DNA of 63,810 nucleotides, filler included, from Reticulomyxa filosa (lineage: Eukaryota; Protista; Foraminifera): assembly GCA_000512085.1 (NCBI GenBank). It is 20 parts of 20 records of this genome, joined end to end, with 100 filler letters (N's around TTAATTAATTAA, not from the genome) between each part and the next. Parts side by side here need not be neighbours in the genome. Positions count along the whole stretch, not along the records: positions 8,870 to 16,895 come from ASPP01007525.1; 19 more parts are not named here. The stretch is one strand, 5' to 3'. This document shows, in pieces, positions 6,993 through 17,379 of this stretch. Numbering within the stretch: position 1 is the stretch's first letter; every line of letters begins with the position of its first letter. A program made the translations under genes and the position numbers. The notes beneath the pieces were generated by a model. The model saw only the letters and a list, made by a program, of their open reading frames with translations. It was not told the DNA's origin and searched no databases.

Positions 6993-8896
6993 AATGACAA
7001 TAACTACTTAGGGCCATGGCTTATTTGTCGCACAAGAGAAGCAATCGTCAAACAACTGGAGAAAGGCAGCCGTAATGAAGAAGTCTTCTTTGAAATGGAC
7101 GACTGTGTCTTGCTTAAAGACAAAAATCAATTGTCAAAGATCGTGTGAAGCATATTCAACGGACAGACAGTGGGGTAATTCAGTTCGTTGAGACCACGGA
7201 GTTTGCCAAAGGTTCAACGCCAATTGCGAGATTTGACCAAGGCCTTTTGAACTCAACTATCTCTTCATCACAACGTATACATCTTTTGTTTTGCTTGGGA
7301 ATGACTAAGATGTGAAAGGGATCAGCACAATACACAAATACAAAATAGTTTCAGTGTTATTTGCGTTAGACAGAAAAACGCTGTCGGATTTGGATAAGTG
7401 AATATATTCGCTATTTGAACACACGTCGCATTTATGAGTCTCATTTCAAAGTTCAAGCATTAGACCACATTGAGTCACATATGCCAATCCATGTGATATA
7501 CTATCATGTCGTCGACCACATTTGGCGTGGTCATGGAAAATCTATTAAACATTAAGAAAACAGATTCATCATCAGAAAGTATGAAGTACCTGTCTTACTC
7601 AATCTTTTTTGACAGTAAAACTAAGAGAACATTTCATGGACTTATGAATGACATGGCAGAAAGTATATCAAGAATTCCTGGCCTCTCAACACATGGCCTA
7701 TATGAAGTTGAGCAAAGAAACGGACGCAAAGCGAAAGATTGGACAAGTGCAAGAGATAAACTACAGCGAGCAAAAAGAAGCGCACAAAATGAACCAACGA
7801 GCATTGGAAACAACATTTGTGAAATCAAGAAAAGAGGCGAAAGATAAGATATGCTTTGGTTTTCAATGCAAATACCGCAATTGGCTCAAAGTGAAACTAT
7901 TGTAAAATATACATACAAATGCAAATGCAAATGCAGTCATAAAAAATGTATCAAATGATAATGATTTGACAATGAGTGATAGTGACAAATTATTTATCAA
8001 TTTTTTGAAAAGCACTTATGTAAACCACTATATTTCGAAGACAAAATAACGGAGCCTGTTAATATTCAGAGTGTTCTTCACAATTCTCAATCTTATCCAA
8101 AATATTTCCTTTCCAATCTAGTGTTTTATTGGCTGAAAAAGATCATTGTGCGTATACTACATACATACATACATAAACATAAATATATTTGTATGTATAT
8201 GTATACATGTATATGTGTGTAAACTCTTTTTTTAAAAAAATTCTTTGCTTGTATTTGAATGAATGGGTTGAATTGAATATAGATTATACAATTCTGGAAA
8301 GAAAGAAATGGTTTGGACACTCGAAACCCTAAAAATATTTGAGATTGACACGCCATTTTCCGAATACGAGAATAGAGCCATCGGAGGGAAGGCAGCCCTG
8401 GTGAATAGCAGCAAGCATCTACTCAAAGAGTTTGGCTCTAATGTCGAAAATCAGACTTCAAAAGTCTCCGAATATGACTTATCATTTGACTCCAGGAACA
8501 AAAAGAAGTTTAACACTATTTACTTGTCGTTGGAATCAATGGCTAACCAGGTGCACATGGCCCTCAAGTCTCAATGTTATGAAAAAGAAAAACTAATTTC
8601 AGCATTTTAAAAACATTTTGTTAATTGTAATTTTTTCTTTATAAAATTGAAAAATTTGAAGTCTAATTTTCTTTTAAATTGAAATTACTCCTATCATATT
8701 CTAGCAATAAAAAACTAAACATAATTTTTTTGATAAAAAGTTTGATTCACATAATAATATGGTAATATTNNNNNNNNNNNNNNNNNNNNNNNNNNNNNNN
8801 NNNNNNNNNNNNNTTAATTAATTAANNNNNNNNNNNNNNNNNNNNNNNNNNNNNNNNNNNNNNNNNNNNAAAAAAAAAATAATGGACAAAAGTGAT

Positions 8897-11800
8897 TTAT
8901 TTGAGTTGATTATTTATAACAACAATGCTTGGCAAAGAGGGATTAGCATTCGACACTAAAGATTGCTGGTTATTGTTTTCTGGAACGTATTCAACAACTT
9001 CCTCAACAACATAACGACGACGGATGACCATAGCATCTTTCCCAAGAACAATTTCTTTGTAAAATAGGAACAACACTTGGTAAATAGCTTTGCCTTTAGC
9101 AGCCTGTGGTTTCCAAAGAGCGAGGATGTCATGAACAAATTTGGCCAATTTATCAGCAACAAGTTCGAGCGGCGCTGGAAGAATTAAAGAATTGACATCA
9201 ATGGAAGAATCATAGCGGTCAGCTTTTTCTTTGATTTCCTTTTCGTCGGCCCATTCACAAATGATATCATTGATATCTTGAAGAGCACGTTCGGAGGCTT
9301 TTTTGAGATTGGCCCCTTTTTCGGTGGTGGGTTTCCAAGCACGAACCAGCTCGTAAAAATCGTGACTAAGTTTGGGATTTTCAATTTCAGTAAATTCTTT
9401 CAACGTAGTGAATCGTTTCAAAGTTGCCTGCATTTCCACATATACATCATAGTCTTTGAGAAACAGTTTGACATTATGAAAGCGATGATGTGTTTTGGAT
9501 TTGGCATTGAAAAAGTCTTTATCTTCGGAGACAATCATATTAAATTCAGGAGCGCTCTTGACGACATTGACAGCTGCTTCCAAGCTGAATGCATGCGGAC
9601 ATAAAATAGTGAATCGACCAATGTCAAACACGCAATTGAAATCCCCGTCATAATCGGCCTCGATTTTCTCTTGCAGTCTGCCATCACCTTTCAAATCGGG
9701 CTTGGCAATGATGACCTTGTACTTGGCGAGTTCCGAGAGCAGTCGTTGCAAATCAGGACTGCTCATCGCCTTGCGACTTCGTTCGATCAAATCCTCCAAA
9801 CTGGTCGCGTGTTGTCTAATCTTCCTGGCCTCCACAGCCAAAATGTCATTGGGTTTAAGCGCATACGTATACTTGTAGTTATTGCTAGGAGGGATGACAT
9901 CAGTACGTCGAAAGAAGGTTTTGACACTATACTCGGCATTGAAGAATTGGATCTTTTGAATGCCCTCGATGCATTTCTCTTCGCAAGTGGGACAAATGAA
10001 TAATGCCTCACTATTGATCAAAAAGGGTTCATCACCTTTACGCGTGTATCCAAGATTGATCCACGTGGGTAGTTTGTTTCTCGCAGCTAAGCATTTGTCC
10101 GTGGCATTTTTGCAAAAACCGAGCAGATTTGCACCAGAGTCAATTTTGCCAATTTCTTCGAGTTTTATGCCGTGTTTGAGCGTATCTTCATTGTTGTTTG
10201 TGTTAAGTCTTTGAGGAATTCCCTCTTCCTGGCCCTCGATCATGACCGACCCCTCCTGCGAAGCAAATGCACTCTGTTGTGAATGCACATCAACAACAAC
10301 ACGTCGATCACCACTAGCATTCGGTGCCTGTCTTCGTCGTTCGTGTTCGAGTTCCATTTCGTGTTCCTGTTCCCGTGTTCTTTCCTGTTCCCGTTCCTTT
10401 TCGCGTTCCTGTCGTTCTCTTTCCTGTTCCAGCTCGCGTTCCCGCTGCTGTTCGGCATACCGACGCTGTCGTTCCAGCTGTTCCTCGAGATGCTTCCTCT
10501 GATCCTCCTGGAGTTTGCGTTTGTGTTCCTGCTCCTGCATTTGAATCTCGTATTCGCGTTGACGCTGCATCTTCCGCTTCTCCTCCATGTACCGCATACA
10601 CACGGTGCGTATAGCGAGCATGACAGATCCAAGGAACACCACAGCGCCAAGGATGGAGCCGTAGATGATAGCGGACGACGTCGAGGAGGAGGATGAAGAG
10701 CTACCCGAAGAGTGTCTAGATGAATGCGAAGGAACTCCAAAGTAGTACCATTGTGCACGAATGTCACTTTCGCATTCGTAAAAAAGGACGAATGCAGCAT
10801 CGGAGAGCACAATGATATTGGGCGTGGTACATAAATAGTAATCGCCGACCTCAAACTCGGGTCCGATTCTACTGCCATCCGTGCCAAAGTATTGGCCAAG
10901 AGTCGACGCCGTGAGTCCCCAATACACGATAATAAACGAGCTGTTGGTGAACACGCCAATGCGAGGTTCGTTGAGACTGTAGCTGCTATTGCTGAGCTGC
11001 ACTTCATCGTACTTGACCATCGAACTGCTAAATCGCTGTCCGGAGATGGCGTATCTGGTATCTTCTTCGACGTAATCTTGATACGCGAACAGCAACTCGC
11101 CATTGGGCAGCAATGCCACGGTGGGGTTCTTTTGTGCTTGATACGTCCTGCTGTTCACTAAAAACAGTGATCCTGACACTGATCCGTTCGTTCCTCGCAC
11201 TTGCCCATATACATCTGGCTTGTTGCTACCATCATTAGCATTACATGCCAATGCCAATACCACCTCTTCTTGTGAACTCAATGCCATACTGGGGACGTTC
11301 GCATCACTCGTCGTCCAACAATTATTCACCACAAACTCGCTGCCCGATTTTGCGCCGTTGCTATCAAACACTCGCCCGTGCACCTTGTAGTATTCCATCG
11401 TCGAGTTGTACATCGACCACGCCACAATGAATCCTCCTGATGGCAGGCTCATCACCACTGGACTTGTTTGTGATGCCGTGTATACGCGGTCACTGGCGAT
11501 AAACTCGGACCCAACCTTGTTCGTTGCACTGCTGAAACGCTGACCATGGATTCGGTCACTCGACGAATTCGTATCACTCGTTTGCCATACCACTACGAAA
11601 CCGCCATTGCTCAATGCACTCACCCATGGGCTTTTTTGGTCGTCTGTTTTATACGTATTAATCACAAAGTTTGAATACACTTTTTCTCCTGTGCTCTTGT
11701 ACAGCTGTCCATAAATGTCGTACGTCCCGTCGCTTGTGTGCCGGTCCTCCCATACCACTATTATGTTCCCATTCGATAGCTGCGTCGCGCTTGGAGACGT

Positions 11801-11950
11801 CTGCGACGAATATGTCTCCTCGTTCACTGTTATCTCGCTTCCCTTTTTGTACAGTCCTACGTCGTCTGTTGACCATACCAAATCGTCTCCTCTACTGCAT
11901 GCACTCAGGTACGAGGCACACGCTATCACCACCAAGACTACTACCGTCAT
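8897..11950 (-). CDS. Single-pass membrane receptor-like protein: signal peptide, 7 beta-propeller-like repeats, TM helix, coiled coil, Cys4 module, RelA/SpoT-like nucleotidyltransferase domain
   Basis: Intronless ORF with first ATG at 11950 (MTVVVLVVIACASYLSAC). Repeats follow EFxVNxxTxxxQxxPxVxxLxNGGFVVVW. TM is AIIYGSILGAVVFLGSVMLAI at ~10610-10672. RSH-like motifs are LKxxxRxxEK, DIGRFTILC, KDFF...HHRFHNV and VEMQ at ~9400-9720. Confidence 0.85.
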   Translation of the reverse strand: MTVVVLVVIACASYLSACSRGDDLVWSTDDVGLYKKGSEITVNEETYSSQTSPSATQLSNGNIIVVWEDRHTSDGTYDIYGQLYKSTGEKVYSNFVINTYKTDDQKSPWVSALSNGGFVVVWQTSDTNSSSDRIHGQRFSSATNKVGSEFIASDRVYTASQTSPVVMSLPSGGFIVAWSMYNSTMEYYKVHGRVFDSNGAKSGSEFVVNNCWTTSDANVPSMALSSQEEVVLALACNANDGSNKPDVYGQVRGTNGSVSGSLFLVNSRTYQAQKNPTVALLPNGELLFAYQDYVEEDTRYAISGQRFSSSMVKYDEVQLSNSSYSLNEPRIGVFTNSSFIIVYWGLTASTLGQYFGTDGSRIGPEFEVGDYYLCTTPNIIVLSDAAFVLFYECESDIRAQWYYFGVPSHSSRHSSGSSSSSSSTSSAIIYGSILGAVVFLGSVMLAIRTVCMRYMEEKRKMQRQREYEIQMQEQEHKRKLQEDQRKHLEEQLERQRRYAEQQRERELEQERERQEREKEREQERTREQEHEMELEHERRRQAPNASGDRRVVVDVHSQQSAFASQEGSVMIEGQEEGIPQRLNTNNNEDTLKHGIKLEEIGKIDSGANLLGFCKNATDKCLAARNKLPTWINLGYTRKGDEPFLINSEALFICPTCEEKCIEGIQKIQFFNAEYSVKTFFRRTDVIPPSNNYKYTYALKPNDILAVEARKIRQHATSLEDLIERSRKAMSSPDLQRLLSELAKYKVIIAKPDLKGDGRLQEKIEADYDGDFNCVFDIGRFTILCPHAFSLEAAVNVVKSAPEFNMIVSEDKDFFNAKSKTHHRFHNVKLFLKDYDVYVEMQATLKRFTTLKEFTEIENPKLSHDFYELVRAWKPTTEKGANLKKASERALQDINDIICEWADEKEIKEKADRYDSSIDVNSLILPAPLELVADKLAKFVHDILALWKPQAAKGKAIYQVLFLFYKEIVLGKDAMVIRRRYVVEEVVEYVPENNNQQSLVSNANPSLPSIVVINNQLK

Positions 11951-13459
11951 TCGAATTGTCAAAGTGCCAGTTTGCAAAAAATATTACACCAAATAGGGAT
12001 GTTCGCTTTCTGTAGGATACAGAATGGTAACCGCTTCTGTTTTTACGGTTTGGAGAGCAAGGGTTTGGGTTTCCTTTTTCGACTAGTTCACTTCCCCCTC
12101 CCTCCCCTTCTTTCCTGTGGTCACTTGGGTCTGCTTTTTTTTATATGCTACGAGAAACAGTTTGCAAACAAGGATTTATAATTTCTTTACACGTGGAGAG
12201 AAAAAAACTATGAGAAAAAAAAAAAACGTTTTATACGTTAAGAAACTCCTACGTTTAAACGGAAAGCATATGAGAGACCTTGGTCGTTGTTCACCTCAAT
12301 TTTTTTTTAGTCCAAATAGAAACAAGCATATTTAACAAAAACTCTGACCATTTTTTACAACAATCCAGGGCAAATAAAGATTACATGCCATGGGGTCACT
12401 AACAGTCGTTTGATAAAAACACGCTCAAATAGGCCAAACAATATCAAGTGCTTATACGTACACTTAGGTAAAAGTGTAACAATGAAAACACTCTCCAAAA
12501 TGGTAGCACGATATGCAATGCCAATCAAAAAATGAAAAACAGTGTGCGCCCGTGTAGGAACGTAGTCCTATTACACGTGTGATCATTTATCAAGTAAAAG
12601 AGGTATCCAAAATACAATCAAACAGTAATGCACCTGTGTCATGTTTGAGATTACACTATCATAATGTTACATTAGAGGAGCGGAACGATAAACCTTCTCT
12701 TAATAGTTATTACTGTGATTATGCACAAAAACATTTGTGTACGAAACGTAAAAAATGACCGGTGAAAGTATTGCTTGCATTTTCTGTTCAAACTTGTAAA
12801 TTTTGCAGTATATTTTTAGATTCGTTTGATTGAGTTCCATAATTACTTTTTCCTAAATTGGTACAAAATTTACTTTTATTTTAAAGACATCAAATAGATT
12901 TATTTAAGGGTGTAAACCTTAGTGGCCTTTCTTTGGCTACAAACACAACAGTGAAAGAATACTCTTAAGCTTAACGCAATCGAAATTTTGCTGTTCTTTT
13001 GAATAAAAAAGAAAACATGAGCGTGTTTAAATAGTATAGCCAAGTGCTACGTTATATGATTGTTTTCTCATCCAGCAACATTTATTATCCCAATAAACAG
13101 AATGAAAACTGTTTAAAAAGTTGTAAATTTGATGTGAGAAATAAAGTTATCAATCCTTTCATTCAAAAAAATAGTTTAAAAACGAATTAAAAATATAATA
13201 ACACTCACAATAAAAAAATATTATCAATTATATACACAAAAATAAAAACTCAAAGCAATAAAATTTTTGGAAACGCAAGTTTTGATAAAACAAATCGGGA
13301 ATGGCAAATAGGCAAAAATGCCTAGTGAAGATGGATTATTGATTTATTGTGCATAAGCAAAGAAATCAAAAGCGTTTGTTTTAAATATGCAAAGTTTAAA
13401 CACTTGAGTTTTTAAATATACATAATTATGAAATAAAAACAAACTAAAAAAATAATCTG

Positions 13460-13560
13460 AACATAGTTTATAATGAACTTGTTGAATTCAAATCCACCCT
13501 CGTTGAATTAACGAATATCGAATCCAATTGTCCAATATCGCATTAATATTTTTTTCTAAC
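13460..13560 (-). pseudogene. Remnant exon carrying the NWIRxxxxxRGWIxEFNK motif
   Basis: Translates KNINAILDNWIRYSLIQRGWI-(frameshift)-EFNKFIINYV; the same motif occurs at ~2000 and ~48070. Confidence 0.55.
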
Positions 13561-14742
13561 TGTTTAATAATTTTTTTAAATATTATTAGTGCCTTCCCTA
13601 TTTTCTGACCACTGAAATCGGGATGGTTGCTCTGGTAACTTGCGTCAGTTGACTTTCTGCAGGCAATGATATCCCTGATATCGTGACGCAACGTCCTATT
13701 TTGACGCTAGTCAAGTGATTTATTCAACCCAAAGCAATTTGTTCAAACAAACCTCTTCAAGGATAAGTTCCACAGACTTACAAAAAATCGTTATAAAACG
13801 TGATTGTATTCTTATCATAAATATAAGTTTCTATACTCAAACTATTGGAATAGATAAACACTTTGCAGTGAAAATTAAACATAATAATACATACGATTAC
13901 AGTGAAAGATGTTACTTCTATGTTTTACACAAGCTAGTTTTTTTAATTCCAAAAATTTCTCTTTTTAAATTTTGAGCTAATTCTTTTATCTTTATTACTC
14001 AACAACAAAAAATAGAAACGATGTGCGCTACATAAATATAAAATCTCATAATTATAAAAGAAATTGTTATTTTATCATACAACCAAAAACGAATAATTAG
14101 TACACGTAAATAAATCAAAACCACCAGTGTATGTGTAAATACAGGCCAAATAAATCATGAATAAATGTAATAACAAAAAAAAGATGCTCTTTTAAAACCA
14201 TAATGTTTATTAGATGGTCGACTTCATATGCATGTCCAAGATACACACATTTACTTCTTCAATAAAGAAGGTGCAGAGAGCTATCTTTAAAAATCACATT
14301 GCTGTCCGAGGTTTATACGTCAGCACTTTGATTGCCAAAAAATATTTTTATATCAGACATCATTCTAAAAAGTGGCGATTTTCGACTTTTTAACTGTCTT
14401 ACTTCGAGACTAAAAAAATTGTTAAAAAGTTCCATAGAAATCAATTATAAATACGTAAATATTATTTTTTAAATTTGTTTGCGGCCCTTTATGTTTTGGT
14501 CGTCAACTTTCTGTAAACAACTGTACAAAAAATATAAAATAATTATACAGTTGTTGTGCAACAGGAAAAATTGCAATAATATTTTAGAAGCAAATATTTT
14601 CATAAAATTTTTTGTAAACTAATTATTGTTCAAAAAACGTAAAATTGTTGCTTAAAATTGCATTCAAAATAAAAGTATACAGTAAGCTTTAAAACAGTTG
14701 GCCATAAAAATAAAAAAAAAAGGGAAAAAAAGAAAAGAAAAG

Positions 14743-14789
14743 AAAACTACTGGTCAGGAGGCACTTCGTGCCGCCTGACCAGTAGTTTT
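14743..14789. repeat. Isolated inverted repeat / hairpin
   Basis: AAAACTACTGGTCAGG-A-GGCAC-TTC-GTGCC-G-CCTGACCAGTAGTTTT: a 16-bp perfect stem plus a 5-bp inner stem. Confidence 0.9.
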
Positions 14790-17379
14790 GCTTTCTTTTA
14801 TTCTTTTTTCATTTCTTTCCTTTTTTTTTTATTCGTTGAGTTCTACAAAAGTGTGTTTTTGGCATATCTTTTGAAATCTAAACTGTATCGAGTAAAACTT
14901 TATTCTACGTATGGACGGATTTGCAAAAATGATAGCGATGCGTCATATCTCTTAGTGTATTTCAAAGTATGTATTTTTCATACAAGAACAAAACAAAGAT
15001 ATTCTTTTAGTGTGAAAAGCGTAGATTATTTTAGAACAAATTCTGTTTCATTGATGTTTGCAAGCCAAGTCAGTACGTTTGAGCAATTTTTTTCATTGAT
15101 TGATGAAATTTGTTGATTTGTTGCAAAGTGAATTTGATGATGTGTTTATTTGTTTAAGGAGTGATTCCAACATTGATTGCATTTTTTAACTTTTGTTTTT
15201 GTTATGTGGCAATTTGCGTTGATTGTTTTGGTTTTTTTTTGAAATGTTTCAAATAAAAACATCATCTAATTATTTACAAATTTTTTTTTATTATGTAATT
15301 GTGCAAAGGTGTAAATTTTGCGTTTGATGTTATTGTTGAGCGTATTCGATTAGGTGTTAATTGCGTTTTTGTTATCAAATTGGCGACAGCAGTGTATTAT
15401 CCTTTTAACAAAACCATTCAACGGACGAATTTTTCAAATTTAGTCTAATTTAATGATCCAGCAGCAGAAGTCAGCCTTTCTTTCATTGTCGAGCACAGAC
15501 TTATTGAAGTGGAAAATGTTATACAAGCTTGTACTAACGTTTGCATGTAGAGTGGATCTTTTCAGTTCAACATTTGGTTGATATTTTGCCCTTCCAAATT
15601 GAATAAAGCGCATTTACTAATTGTCTAAGTAATTGAATGAAACATGCTATCTTAATTGCATACGAAGAAGTCTCATTATAATTACTAAGCTTGATAGAAC
15701 CAGGCTAATAGAAATTGATTTATTTTTCAGAAATAGGCGGGACGATAATTATAACGAAGTACATGAACGAAATACGTGCGGTAGGGCCAATCACTTATGA
15801 ATTAACATCAAGGCAAGCATAAAGATCTTCACATATGGTCTCAAAGTAATGTTATTTATTAAGAGACTGCATCCATCAAAATTGATTTCCAAAACACTTT
15901 CGACACATGCAAGAGAATTGTGTCATTTCAACTAAATCGAGAAAAAGTGCCACCCCTACTTGGGAGGCAAACTAACAATTGTGTTAGCAGACGTATAACA
16001 CTATGCACGTCACAATATTACATTTTATCATCACTTCTCTTTCATCAGTGTTAGCAGTACTAAAAATTTAAAAACTTTTATTAATTTAACACCTCACAAA
16101 CAATGATACTATTATTAAAAAATTAACTGCAACTATCAAAGTAAATTACTTGTTAAAGCAATTTTGATAGCACAAATTCAATAATTAACTGCCAGCACAT
16201 ATACCATAAAAACACAAAAGATCATTGACAAATTCCAAAAATTTACATTAAATCCGACCGCCCATACATACGACATAAATTCGTTAAATTATAAATAACA
16301 ACGTGGTTTTTCAATTTTTTTTCAAAAAGCTTAGTCGATCGTTATTGTTTATGCTTCAACCTTCATACCCCATCAGGTACATCAAATTGTACTTGCCTTC
16401 AGGAGAAAGATTAAATGATTTGGCATGTTTAATGTTGATAAGATACAGTATATTATTAATTTGCTCCTTTTTGTTTGTATTACTAAGTTTTATGTTTAGC
16501 AAGCGTAGTACATAATGCAATGTGTAAGTTTTTACTTTAGGGCTTACGTTATTTTTTTTAATTTTAAAAGCAAAAGGAATTTTAATTGAAAAATTTAACC
16601 TTGTGATGCATGAAGGACACTCCAATACTAAAAATTTTTTGTTTAATAAATAATTTAAGATGCTGAACGTAAAAGGTGGCTAACAGAAAATTCTTGTAGA
16701 TATTTACTACTTATTGCCTTTTCAAATTTGTATTTATTGAACAGATCAGGCAATTTTGTGTTATCAATATATTCACTAATTGCAATCCATTTTTATTGTT
16801 TTCGTTTTTCCAAACAAAGGCTGGTTCTTTTTAAATTCTCTTTTCATATCATTGTTTGATTCAATAATATTATCTTCCATATTGACAATTTTAATNNNNN
16901 NNNNNNNNNNNNNNNNNNNNNNNNNNNNNNNNNNNNNNNTTAATTAATTAANNNNNNNNNNNNNNNNNNNNNNNNNNNNNNNNNNNNNNNNNNNNTCGGT
17001 TATCACATATCATATTGCAACAAGCACAGTGGCAAACACAATATTTACAAACAACTTAGACAAGCAAAGCCCCCCATAAATACAAATCTGGGTGTATCTA
17101 TCAATCTCGATAATATTTCTATTATCAATGCATATATCAGTAACAATTCGATTGAAACGATGAACAAAGAGCCAGTGCAATTATCAGATAAAATATTGGA
17201 GCAACGGTTGGATATAACCGCATTACCATTTGACAAATATTGTTACGAAAATGACTTTGATTGCTCCACTATTTATAATCACACATCATCGTACATTTAA
17301 TATCAATTAAAATAATCATTGTCATTGTTATCACTAATATCGACTAACGATCACATTAATTCTCAATTGAAATATATAG

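What the first reader, a model, noticed from the sequence alone, without database searches (positions are those of the whole stretch)
8897..11950. Candidate eukaryotic receptor alarmone synthetase: extracellular beta-propeller coupled across the membrane to a RelA/SpoT-like domain
Seen: an intact 1017-aa ORF with a signal peptide, seven ~55-aa repeats, a Ser linker, one TM helix, a Q/E/R coiled coil and then an enzyme-like domain. Established: small alarmone synthetases such as RelQ carry the ordered motifs RxKxxxSxxxK, DIAGLRIMC, RDYI...GYRSYH and VEIQIRT. This protein has LKGDGRLQEK, DIGRFTILC, KDFF...THHRFHNV and VEMQATL in the same order with similar spacing. Inference: it is a type-I receptor built like a receptor kinase or cyclase, whose output is a (p)ppNpp-type nucleotide or a pyrophosphoryl transfer, possibly activated by coiled-coil dimerisation. 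Characterised eukaryotic RSH synthetases are plastid-targeted. I know of no characterised cell-surface one.
Basis: partly seen in the sequence, partly recalled or inferred. Interest (0 to 1): 0.92.

Follow-up and report, generated by a model that had tools for sequence, protein, structure and literature searches.

The report
Foraminiferan membrane receptor with RelA/SpoT-like output
A single-pass membrane protein of the foraminiferan Reticulomyxa filosa joins an outside beta-propeller to an inside Tas1/RelA-SpoT-like pyrophosphokinase module, and more than 50 cytosolic NACHT-WD40 (NLR-like) proteins of the same organism carry that module as their effector, so it looks like a surface sensor of an innate-immunity-type system rather than a housekeeping alarmone enzyme.

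Summary
Window 8897-11950 (minus strand) is an uninterrupted 1017-aa ORF. It is the only annotated gene on R. filosa contig ASPP01007525.1.

- **Layout:** signal peptide, seven-bladed beta-propeller, Ser-rich stalk, one TM helix, an E/R/Q-rich charged helix, then a ~370-aa cytosolic module.
- **Charged helix:** it has no heptad pattern, so it is more likely a single ER/K-type helix than a coiled coil.
- **Module core (aa 716-904):** it is a RelA/SpoT-homologue synthetase fold. The AF2 model has pLDDT 94. All 48 significant Foldseek PDB hits are RSH synthetases. The T6SS toxin Tas1 is best (VIA Z 12.2), and the family profile hits Tas1 at E 2.7e-8.
- **Catalytic residues:** the Lys/Arg, Asp (D776) and Glu (E839) positions are present and 93-99% conserved across the family.
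- **New context:** the module (Cys4 beta-subdomain + RSH core + helical part) is about 50% identical to the N-terminal effector module of at least 55 R. filosa NACHT(-WD40) proteins. Its nearest bacterial relatives are polymorphic-toxin and TA-like proteins. The ectodomain's relatives are bacterial surface proteins.

My reading is a surface receptor that shares its effector with an NLR-like repertoire, as TIR is shared by TLRs and NLRs. Its output is probably toxSAS-like. Activity, acceptor, transcript and the 3' end (contig edge 27 nt after the stop) are untested.

The parts
11894..11950 (-). Signal peptide, aa 1-19 (MTVVVLVVIACASYLSAC...). It ends in a lipobox-like L-S-A-C.
   Evidence: Hydropathy peak at aa 1-3 windows; sequence read. 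No dedicated predictor was run.
10733..11893 (-). Extracellular seven-bladed beta-propeller, aa 20-406 (seven ~55-aa repeats, five N-glycosylation sequons).
   Evidence: AF2 pLDDT 90.3, pTM 0.90. Foldseek best matches: CylK propeller TMq 0.70 and seven-bladed PLL/PHL lectins. Homologues are bacterial RTX/cadherin/flagellin-linked surface proteins at 28-43% identity.
10673..10732 (-). Ser-rich juxtamembrane stalk, aa 407-426.
   Evidence: Sequence.
10604..10672 (-). Single transmembrane helix, aa 427-449, followed by basic residues (inside).
   Evidence: It is the only internal hydropathy peak, windows starting at aa 425-434.
10328..10594 (-). E/R/Q-rich charged helix, aa 453-541. It is ER/K-type and probably a single alpha-helix spacer, not a canonical coiled coil. 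It contains an 18-nt tandem repeat at 10364-10430.
   Evidence: 29% E, 22% R, 17% Q; 17% hydrophobic; no heptad register. TRF result.
10157..10327 (-). Linker, aa 542-598, with no detectable homologues. Homology to the NLR-type module starts at about aa 589-599.
   Evidence: BLASTP to P0002 and P0004 starts at aa 589/599. No Pfam hit.
9806..10156 (-). Beta-rich subdomain with four invariant Cys (C613, C620, C653, C656), aa 599-715. It is probably a zinc-ribbon-like regulatory part of the module.
   Evidence: Cys conserved in 62/62, 62/62, 60/63 and 61/63 sequences. The AF2 model is all-beta with pLDDT >85. In the paralogue P0002, weak zinc-ribbon Pfam hints lie on the equivalent CPxC stretch.
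9239..9805 (-). RelA/SpoT-homologue (RSH) synthetase-fold core, aa 716-904. Motif residues: K754, R758, K762, D776, R779, R823, E839, Q841, H863, Y866.
   Evidence: VIA-align: Tas1 6ox6 Z 12.2, rmsd 3.5, 170 aligned; RelQ Z 11.6; CapRel Z 10.8. Foldseek: all 48 hits with E<=1e-3 are RSH synthetases. Profile A2 against PDB: Tas1 at E 2.7e-8. Register against E. coli RelA: D776=D275, E839=E335. Conservation is 93-99%.
9041..9238 (-). C-terminal helical part of the module, aa 905-970.
   Evidence: AF2 helices, pLDDT 80-98. Conserved with the paralogues up to aa 970.
8897..9040 (-). Low-GC tail, aa 971-1017, plus the stop codon. It aligns weakly with the pre-NACHT linker of the paralogues (EYVPENNN against ETYIPLQANN). 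The stop lies 27 nt from the contig edge.
   Evidence: Alignment A1; GC 0.37 and GC3 0.30; terminal sequence.

Best explanation
The gene encodes a type I single-pass membrane receptor of Reticulomyxa filosa. A bacterial-type, lectin-like seven-bladed beta-propeller faces outward. A Ser-rich stalk, one TM helix and a long charged helix connect it to a cytosolic module made of a Cys4 beta-subdomain, a Tas1-like RelA/SpoT-homologue pyrophosphokinase core and a helical part. The same module is the N-terminal effector of a large family (at least 55 gene models) of NACHT(-WD40) NLR-like proteins in this organism. I therefore read the protein as the surface-sensor counterpart of that cytosolic repertoire, in the way the TIR domain is shared between membrane TLRs and cytosolic NLRs. 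Inferred mechanism: ligand binding or clustering of the propeller relieves autoinhibition of the RSH core or brings cores together. The core then transfers pyrophosphate from ATP to the 3'-OH of an acceptor, which could be an adenine or guanine nucleotide or the tRNA CCA end. The outcome would be local ATP depletion, translation arrest or a nucleotide signal, that is a toxSAS-like defence or self/non-self output. Shown here: the architecture, the fold, the conserved catalytic residues and the paralogy with NLR effectors. Inferred: the activation mode, the acceptor and the biological role.
For: The ORF is intact and annotated as one exon. The module model has pLDDT 94. The fold is RSH synthetase, with Tas1 the top hit by both Foldseek and VIA-align. 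The ESM Atlas nearest shapes also include PF04607 clusters. The family profile hits Tas1 at E 2.7e-8, with the K-x3-R-x3-K and D-x2-R motifs aligned. Paralogues P0002 and P0004 pass Pfam's gathering score for PF04607 (30.2 and 27.9 bits against a cut-off of 27). The hhalign register puts D776 on RelA D275 and E839 on RelA E335. These positions are 93-99% conserved, and the window protein has the consensus at each. Aa 599-970 are 41-51% identical to the N-terminal ~30-410 of 56 R. filosa proteins, nearly all with NACHT and many with WD40. The nearest non-foraminiferan relatives are an eCIS-core/calpain giant protein, a MuF/SPP1-gp7 polymorphic-toxin-type protein, and small stand-alone bacterial proteins, one of them with an overlapping small upstream ORF. 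RelA_SpoT is a recognised, uncharacterised effector domain of fungal NLRs (PMC4986451; PMC10197012). The ectodomain is a propeller whose best structural matches include lectins.
Against: No RNA or independent read data were found, so neither the transcript nor the junction between the two halves is confirmed. The protein itself gives no Pfam PF04607 hit and no phmmer hit to PDB. The assignment therefore rests on the family profile and a predicted structure. The hhalign score against E. coli RelA is weak (E 0.17). The contig ends 27 nt after the stop, so the 3' context is unknown. An immune role is inferred only from shared domains, and no NLR function is known in Foraminifera. No immunity or hydrolase partner was identified. 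No other R. filosa protein with this ectodomain was found, so this is a single gene rather than a receptor family.
Confidence: 0.6

Rival explanations
1. The protein is a receptor alarmone synthetase used for ordinary physiological signalling. Ligand binding switches on synthesis of a (p)ppNpp second messenger, in the way receptor guanylyl cyclases make cGMP, with no toxic or immune meaning.
For: The architecture and catalytic residues are the same ones listed above. Exported and signalling SAS enzymes exist in bacteria (PMC12691689). Nothing in the sequence separates a 'signal' from a 'toxic dose'.
Against: The closest solved relative is a toxin, Tas1, and the closest bacterial relatives are polymorphic-toxin or TA-like proteins. 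The module's main genomic context is as the effector end of an expanded NACHT-WD40 family, a context linked elsewhere to defence or cell death (PMC4986451). No (p)ppNpp receptor or hydrolase partner is known in this organism.
Confidence: 0.2
2. This is an artefact or a relic. Either the assembly is chimeric (a bacterial-type propeller gene joined in frame to the 5' module of an NLR-like gene), or the gene is a decaying, truncated NLR-derived gene that is not expressed.
For: The 5' half is GC-rich (GC3 0.55-0.63), whereas the paralogue P0016 has GC3 0.32 and the tail 0.30. The ectodomain's relatives are bacterial and the signal peptide ends in a lipobox-like LSAC. The stop lies 27 nt from the contig edge, and the tail resembles the pre-NACHT linker. 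No RNA evidence exists.
Against: The reading frame stays open for 3,051 nt across the putative junction, while the flanking 5 kb has no ORF longer than 114 aa. Every conserved catalytic and Cys position carries the family consensus. The parts form a coherent type I layout: SP, ectodomain, TM, positive-inside residues, spacer, enzyme. GC3 stays raised well into the module (0.56-0.58 at aa 651-750), so there is no sharp compositional break at the linker. The flanks are AT-rich and eukaryote-like. The paralogue gene is intron-less through this region, so a hidden intron is unlikely.
Confidence: 0.1
3. The module works as a non-catalytic adaptor. It serves as a homotypic interaction domain that recruits or nucleates the NACHT-WD40 paralogues carrying the same module, as death-fold or TIR adaptors do, and enzymatic activity is secondary or lost.
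For: The same module occurs in the receptor and in at least 55 NLR-like proteins. P0002 carries it twice in tandem. The module has extra non-catalytic subdomains, a Cys4 beta part and a helical part.
Against: The ATP-binding Lys/Arg residues and the catalytic Asp, Glu and Gln are conserved in 93-99% of family members, including this one. A pure adaptor would not be expected to keep them.
Confidence: 0.08

Closest known systems
Tas1/Apk1, the (p)ppApp-synthesising type VI secretion toxin of Pseudomonas aeruginosa (PDB 6OX6), and toxSAS enzymes in general (FaRel, CapRel, PhRel)
   Same: It is the best structural match (Z 12.2, 170 residues, rmsd 3.5) and the only significant PDB sequence-profile match (E 2.7e-8). 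The K-x3-R-x3-K, D-x2-R and H-x2-Y motifs are shared. Like toxSAS domains, this module is used as an effector fused to sensor or delivery parts.
   Different: Identity is only about 18%. The host is a eukaryote. The module is tethered to the inner face of a membrane receptor rather than secreted or paired with an antitoxin. It has an extra Cys4 beta-subdomain and a helical extension. No immunity gene was seen. The product and acceptor are unknown.
Small alarmone synthetases RelQ/RelP (SAS1/SAS2) and the synthetase domain of long RSH enzymes (RelA, Rel, SpoT)
   Same: The fold is the same (Z 10.4-11.6 for SAS enzymes, 7.3-10.4 for long RSH enzymes). The order of motifs is the same. The catalytic Asp and Glu are in register with RelA D275 and E335.
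   Different: There is no direct Pfam PF04607 hit. EIQIRT is changed to EMQATL and GYRSxH to HHRFH. There is no hydrolase, TGS or ribosome-binding domain. The context is a receptor or NLR rather than the stringent response.
Fungal NLRs with an N-terminal RelA_SpoT effector domain (Dyrka et al. 2014, PMC4986451)
   Same: The paralogues of this protein have exactly that layout: an RSH-type domain, then NACHT, then WD40. This suggests that an equivalent effector was recruited into STAND/NLR proteins in a eukaryote.
   Different: The window protein itself has no NACHT or WD40 domain and is instead a transmembrane receptor. The lineage is Rhizaria, not Fungi. The foraminiferan module is far from PF04607, at borderline scores, and has additional subdomains. 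Homology between the fungal and foraminiferan modules was not tested here.
Type I receptors with a cytosolic enzyme or signalling domain (receptor kinases, receptor guanylyl cyclases, Toll-like receptors)
   Same: The layout is the same: signal peptide, ligand-binding repeat ectodomain, one TM helix, cytosolic output domain. As with TLR and NLR sharing TIR, the output domain is shared with cytosolic STAND sensors.
   Different: The output is an RSH pyrophosphokinase, which I found nowhere in the searched literature. The ectodomain is a bacterial-type propeller rather than LRR, EGF or Ig.

Membership tests
RelA/SpoT homologue (RSH) synthetase superfamily | Synthetase alpha/beta fold (nucleotidyltransferase-like core as in RelQ, RelP, Rel and Tas1) | tested here: met
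   AF2 model pLDDT 94. Foldseek: all 48 hits with E<=1e-3 are RSH synthetases. VIA-align: Z 12.2 for Tas1, 11.6 for RelQ, 10.8 for CapRel; unrelated nucleotidyltransferases score 8.5 or below.
RelA/SpoT homologue (RSH) synthetase superfamily | Sequence match to Pfam PF04607 (RelA_SpoT) at or above the gathering score | tested here: inconclusive
   The window protein has no PF04607 hit even at E<=10. Paralogues at about 50% identity pass: P0002 30.2 bits and P0004 27.9 bits against a cut-off of 27. The family profile hits Tas1 at E 2.7e-8.
RelA/SpoT homologue (RSH) synthetase superfamily | Catalytic Asp (RelA D275) and Glu (RelA E335) plus the basic ATP-binding motif | tested here: met
   D776 and E839 align with RelA D275 and E335 (the score is weak but the register is as expected). 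K754, R758 and K762 align with the Tas1 K/R/K motif. Family conservation is 93-99%.
RelA/SpoT homologue (RSH) synthetase superfamily | ATP-dependent pyrophosphoryl transfer to a 3'-OH acceptor | not testable with these tools
   This needs an enzyme assay or LC-MS.
toxSAS (toxic small alarmone synthetases) | Toxicity on expression, neutralised by a cognate antitoxin, immunity protein or hydrolase | not testable with these tools
   The contig carries no other gene. Only the context of bacterial relatives (MuF, eCIS, TA-like) is suggestive.
NLR / STAND (NACHT) proteins | Central NACHT or NB-ARC NTPase domain | tested here: not met
   There is no NACHT or other P-loop hit in the 1017-aa protein. 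The ORF stops in a linker-like tail. The paralogues do have NACHT. The protein shares their effector but is not an NLR.
Type I single-pass membrane receptor | Cleavable N-terminal signal peptide, one TM helix, N-out/C-in topology | tested here: inconclusive
   There are two hydrophobic segments only (aa 1-19 and 425-452), basic residues after the TM, and sequons on the N-terminal side. No SignalP or DeepTMHMM run and no experiment.
   The best register has 26% hydrophobic a/d positions. The composition is 29% E, 22% R and 17% Q. This looks like an ER/K single helix.

The most novel reading that the evidence does not exclude
Reticulomyxa filosa has a two-tier innate-immunity-type system in which a Tas1-like RSH pyrophosphokinase takes the role that TIR or death domains play in animals and plants. 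It would be the common effector of an expanded cytosolic NACHT-WD40 repertoire and of at least one cell-surface receptor whose ectodomain came from bacteria. This would be the first cell-surface receptor in any organism that signals, or kills locally, through (p)ppNpp synthesis or tRNA pyrophosphorylation.
Probability: 0.35. Interest if true: 0.88.

Novelty: new variant of a known kind. Interest (0 to 1): 0.72.

Why it matters
RSH enzymes are known as bacterial and plastid stringent-response enzymes and, more recently, as bacterial toxins and anti-phage effectors. In eukaryotes outside plastids they are only a poorly understood minor class of fungal NLR effector domains.

This case adds three things. 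A rhizarian protist has expanded a Tas1-like module as the effector of dozens of NLR-like proteins. It has also wired the same module to a transmembrane receptor. Finally, the module is small and soluble, with clear catalytic-residue controls (D776, E839).

That makes two open questions directly testable: what RelA_SpoT effector domains of eukaryotic NLRs actually do, and whether alarmone-type chemistry is used in eukaryotic immunity or self/non-self recognition. It is also an example of bacterial conflict-system parts reused in eukaryotic receptor architectures.

Tried and rejected
- **Direct sequence searches:** Pfam and NCBIfam scans of the whole protein gave only noise on the low-complexity charged region. 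phmmer of aa 590-1017 against PDB gave only chance RyR hits.
- **Subregions:** Pfam on the linker plus Cys subdomain and on the helical tail gave nothing. Pfam on the N-terminal extensions of paralogues, which look UBA/CUE-like by eye, gave only CUE at E 0.064. I do not count that as support.
- **RNA and read evidence:** The look-up of sequencing runs found no RNA run and only two 'synthetic metagenome' runs holding 17% of the words. Laying them gave four short low-depth contigs identical to the assembly. None spans the junction or the contig end, so they are probably derived from the same assembly and are uninformative.
- **Other RNA features:** tRNA, Rfam and tandem-repeat scans of the piece found nothing relevant.
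- **ESM Atlas by features for the Cys subdomain:** scores were 0.78 or below, within the chance range.
- **Literature:** no paper in the held library links Reticulomyxa with NACHT, NLR, RelA or alarmones.
- **Tree:** the careful ML search did not finish within the time limit, so only the quick tree is used, and its placement of the long window branch is tentative.
- **Hidden intron to an off-contig NACHT exon:** considered and judged unlikely, because the paralogue P0016 is one exon through module, NACHT and WD40. It cannot be excluded with only 27 nt of 3' flank.
Full report
**What is there.** The piece (window 8870-16895) is the whole 8,026-nt contig ASPP01007525.1 of the Reticulomyxa filosa assembly GCA_000512085.1. 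Its only long ORF runs 8897..11950 on the minus strand and is 1017 aa from the first ATG. GenBank annotates it as a single-exon gene. The remaining ~5 kb is 27-34% GC, has no ORF longer than 114 aa, and has no tRNA or Rfam match. The stop codon lies 27 nt from the contig edge.

**Architecture.**
- Hydropathy gives two hydrophobic segments only, aa 1-19 and 425-452.
- Between them lie seven ~55-aa repeats. With an alignment of 65 homologues they fold as a closed beta-propeller (pLDDT 90.3, pTM 0.90).
- The best solved matches for the propeller are the CylK propeller domain (TMq 0.70) and the seven-bladed PLL/PHL lectins.
- A Ser-rich stalk (aa 407-426) precedes the TM helix, and basic residues follow it.
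- The next ~90 residues are 29% Glu, 22% Arg and 17% Gln. Only 17% are hydrophobic, and no heptad register is populated above 26%.
- After a linker with no detectable homologues (aa 542-598) comes a ~370-aa conserved module (aa 599-970) and a low-GC tail (aa 971-1017).

**The module is an RSH synthetase.**
- Direct Pfam, NCBIfam and PDB sequence searches with the protein itself find nothing.
- An exhaustive phmmer search and a word-indexed search find about 60 relatives.
- A profile of 81 module sequences (A2) hits the type VI toxin Tas1 (6OX6) at E 2.7e-8. The alignment runs through K-x3-R-x3-K and D-x2-R, and again at H-x2-Y.
- Two paralogues pass Pfam's gathering score for PF04607.
- The AlphaFold2 model of aa 595-975 is very confident (pLDDT 94.3).
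- All 48 Foldseek PDB hits with E<=1e-3 are RSH synthetases: Tas1, RelP, RelQ, CapRel, an exported SAS, Rel, RelA and SpoT.
- VIA-align gives Z 12.2 for Tas1 (170 residues, rmsd 3.5), 11.6 for RelQ and 10.8 for CapRel. Unrelated nucleotidyltransferases score 8.5 or lower. The aligned region is model residues 122-310, which is aa 716-904.
- The ESM Atlas shape search also returns PF04607 clusters.
- hhalign of A2 against E. coli RelA scores weakly (E 0.17) but sits in the expected register. FDIGRFTIL lies on FDVRAVRIV (D776 = D275), HHRFHNV on GYQSIHTV, and VEMQATLK on VEIQIRTK (E839 = E335). That these two RelA residues are the catalytic Asp and Glu is from my own knowledge of the RSH literature.
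- Across the family, K754, R758, K762, D776, R779, R823, E839, Q841, H863 and Y866 are conserved in 93-99% of sequences. The window protein has the consensus at each.

**Extra parts of the module.** N-terminal to the RSH core is an all-beta subdomain (aa 599-715) with four essentially invariant cysteines: C613, C620, C653 and C656. In the paralogue P0002, weak zinc-ribbon Pfam hints fall on the equivalent CPxC stretch. C-terminal to the core is a helical part (aa 905-970).

**Context that changes the interpretation.**
- The module is 41-51% identical to the N-terminal ~30-410 residues of 56 R. filosa proteins in the 559-1780 aa class, plus many fragments. Nearly all carry NACHT and many carry WD40 propellers.
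- One paralogue, P0002, has the module twice.
- The paralogue P0016 is one exon through module, NACHT and WD40.
- The module is therefore the effector end of an expanded NLR-like (STAND) family.
- The same arrangement, RelA_SpoT-NACHT-WD40, is documented as a minor and uncharacterised class of fungal NLRs (PMC4986451; PMC10197012).
- Outside Reticulomyxa the nearest hits are: a 3127-aa bacterial protein with an eCIS core domain and a calpain protease; a 2115-aa MuF/SPP1-gp7 protein that also has a second RelA_SpoT region; and small stand-alone bacterial proteins. One of the small proteins is preceded by a 79-aa ORF overlapping it by 4 nt. These are polymorphic-toxin or toxin-antitoxin-like settings.
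- In a quick ML tree rooted by these bacterial sequences, the window module sits on a long branch outside the 56 NLR-linked modules (SH-aLRT 85-88). I treat this placement as tentative.
- The tail aa 971-1017 aligns weakly with the linker that precedes NACHT in the paralogues. This hints at a shared ancestry with an NLR-type gene.

**Ectodomain origin.**
- Its relatives, at 28-43% identity, are repeats in bacterial RTX-, cadherin-, flagellin- or LTD-linked surface proteins and metagenomic proteins. One of the closest lies on a 449-kb bacterial contig next to dnaB.
- No Reticulomyxa paralogue appeared in either length class.
- The 5' half of the ORF has GC3 of 0.55-0.63, against 0.32 in paralogue P0016.
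- The signal peptide ends in a lipobox-like LSAC.
- Together these features suggest that the ectodomain was acquired from bacteria and fused to the endogenous effector module.
- GC3 stays raised into the first half of the module (0.56-0.58 at aa 651-750). There is therefore no sharp break at the linker, which argues against a simple assembly chimera.

**Most likely mechanism.** I commit to a surface sensor that shares its effector with the cytosolic NLR-like repertoire. Ligand-driven clustering or a conformational change would activate the RSH core. The core would then transfer pyrophosphate from ATP to a nucleotide or to the tRNA 3' end, with a toxSAS-like local outcome (ATP depletion or translation arrest) or a nucleotide signal. 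In a large syncytial, reticulopodial cell, a membrane-tethered effector would keep such an output local. That last point is inference.

**What is missing.**
- No RNA-seq run and no independent reads could be found.
- The 3' context is cut by the contig edge.
- The topology rests on hydropathy alone.
- The acceptor specificity cannot be read from the sequence.
- The literature searches cover only the held library.

**Verdict.** The interpretation shifts from 'receptor alarmone synthetase' to 'membrane receptor carrying the Tas1-like RSH effector module of a foraminiferan NLR-like family'. This is a new variant of known kinds (RSH/toxSAS effectors and NLR effector domains) in a receptor architecture that I could not find described.

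Noticed in passing
P0002 (RFI_08856), aa 15-395 and 397-778: This NACHT paralogue carries the whole Cys4 + RSH + helical module twice in tandem before its NACHT domain (44% and 46% identity to the window module).
   Followed up: partly
Paralogues P0006, P0012, P0036, P0044 and P0048, N-terminal 100-270 aa (alignment A1): Several NLR-like paralogues have an N-terminal extension before the module. It contains a conserved '...LEENNGNVSxVIExL...' segment that looks UBA/CUE-like by eye. Pfam gives only CUE at E 0.064, which is not significant.
   Followed up: partly
window 11894-11950 (aa 1-19): The signal peptide ends in L-S-A-C, which resembles a bacterial lipoprotein lipobox. Together with the bacterial relatives of the ectodomain and the raised GC3 of the 5' half, this hints that the ectodomain was acquired by horizontal transfer.
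   Followed up: partly
window 8897-11950: There is a strong compositional gradient along the ORF. GC3 is about 0.55-0.63 in the ectodomain and TM region, 0.43-0.58 in the first half of the module, and 0.30-0.36 at the 3' end. A typical paralogue gene (P0016) has GC3 0.32.
   Followed up: partly
window 14706-14826: A 59-nt inverted repeat (80% complementary, 3-nt loop), purine-rich on one arm, lies in the AT-rich gene-free flank. A 20-nt tandem repeat overlaps it at 14792-14833.
   Followed up: no
L006 3339-4369 and L005 1987-7595: The bacterial stand-alone homologue P0231 (264 aa) is preceded by a 79-aa ORF overlapping it by 4 nt, a toxin-antitoxin-like layout. Homologue P0108 lies about 3 kb from a long HD + RelA_SpoT + TGS (Rel-type) gene on the same contig.
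   Followed up: no
window 11978-16895: About 4.9 kb upstream of the gene has no annotated gene, no ORF longer than 114 aa, 27-34% GC, and no tRNA or Rfam match. This is unusually empty for half a contig.
   Followed up: partly
L007 (ENA metagenome contig k141_134287), protein P0062: This is the only full-length module homologue not labelled Reticulomyxa (471 aa, about 36-41% identity). It branches deepest in the quick tree and may come from another foraminiferan or rhizarian in an environmental sample.
   Followed up: no
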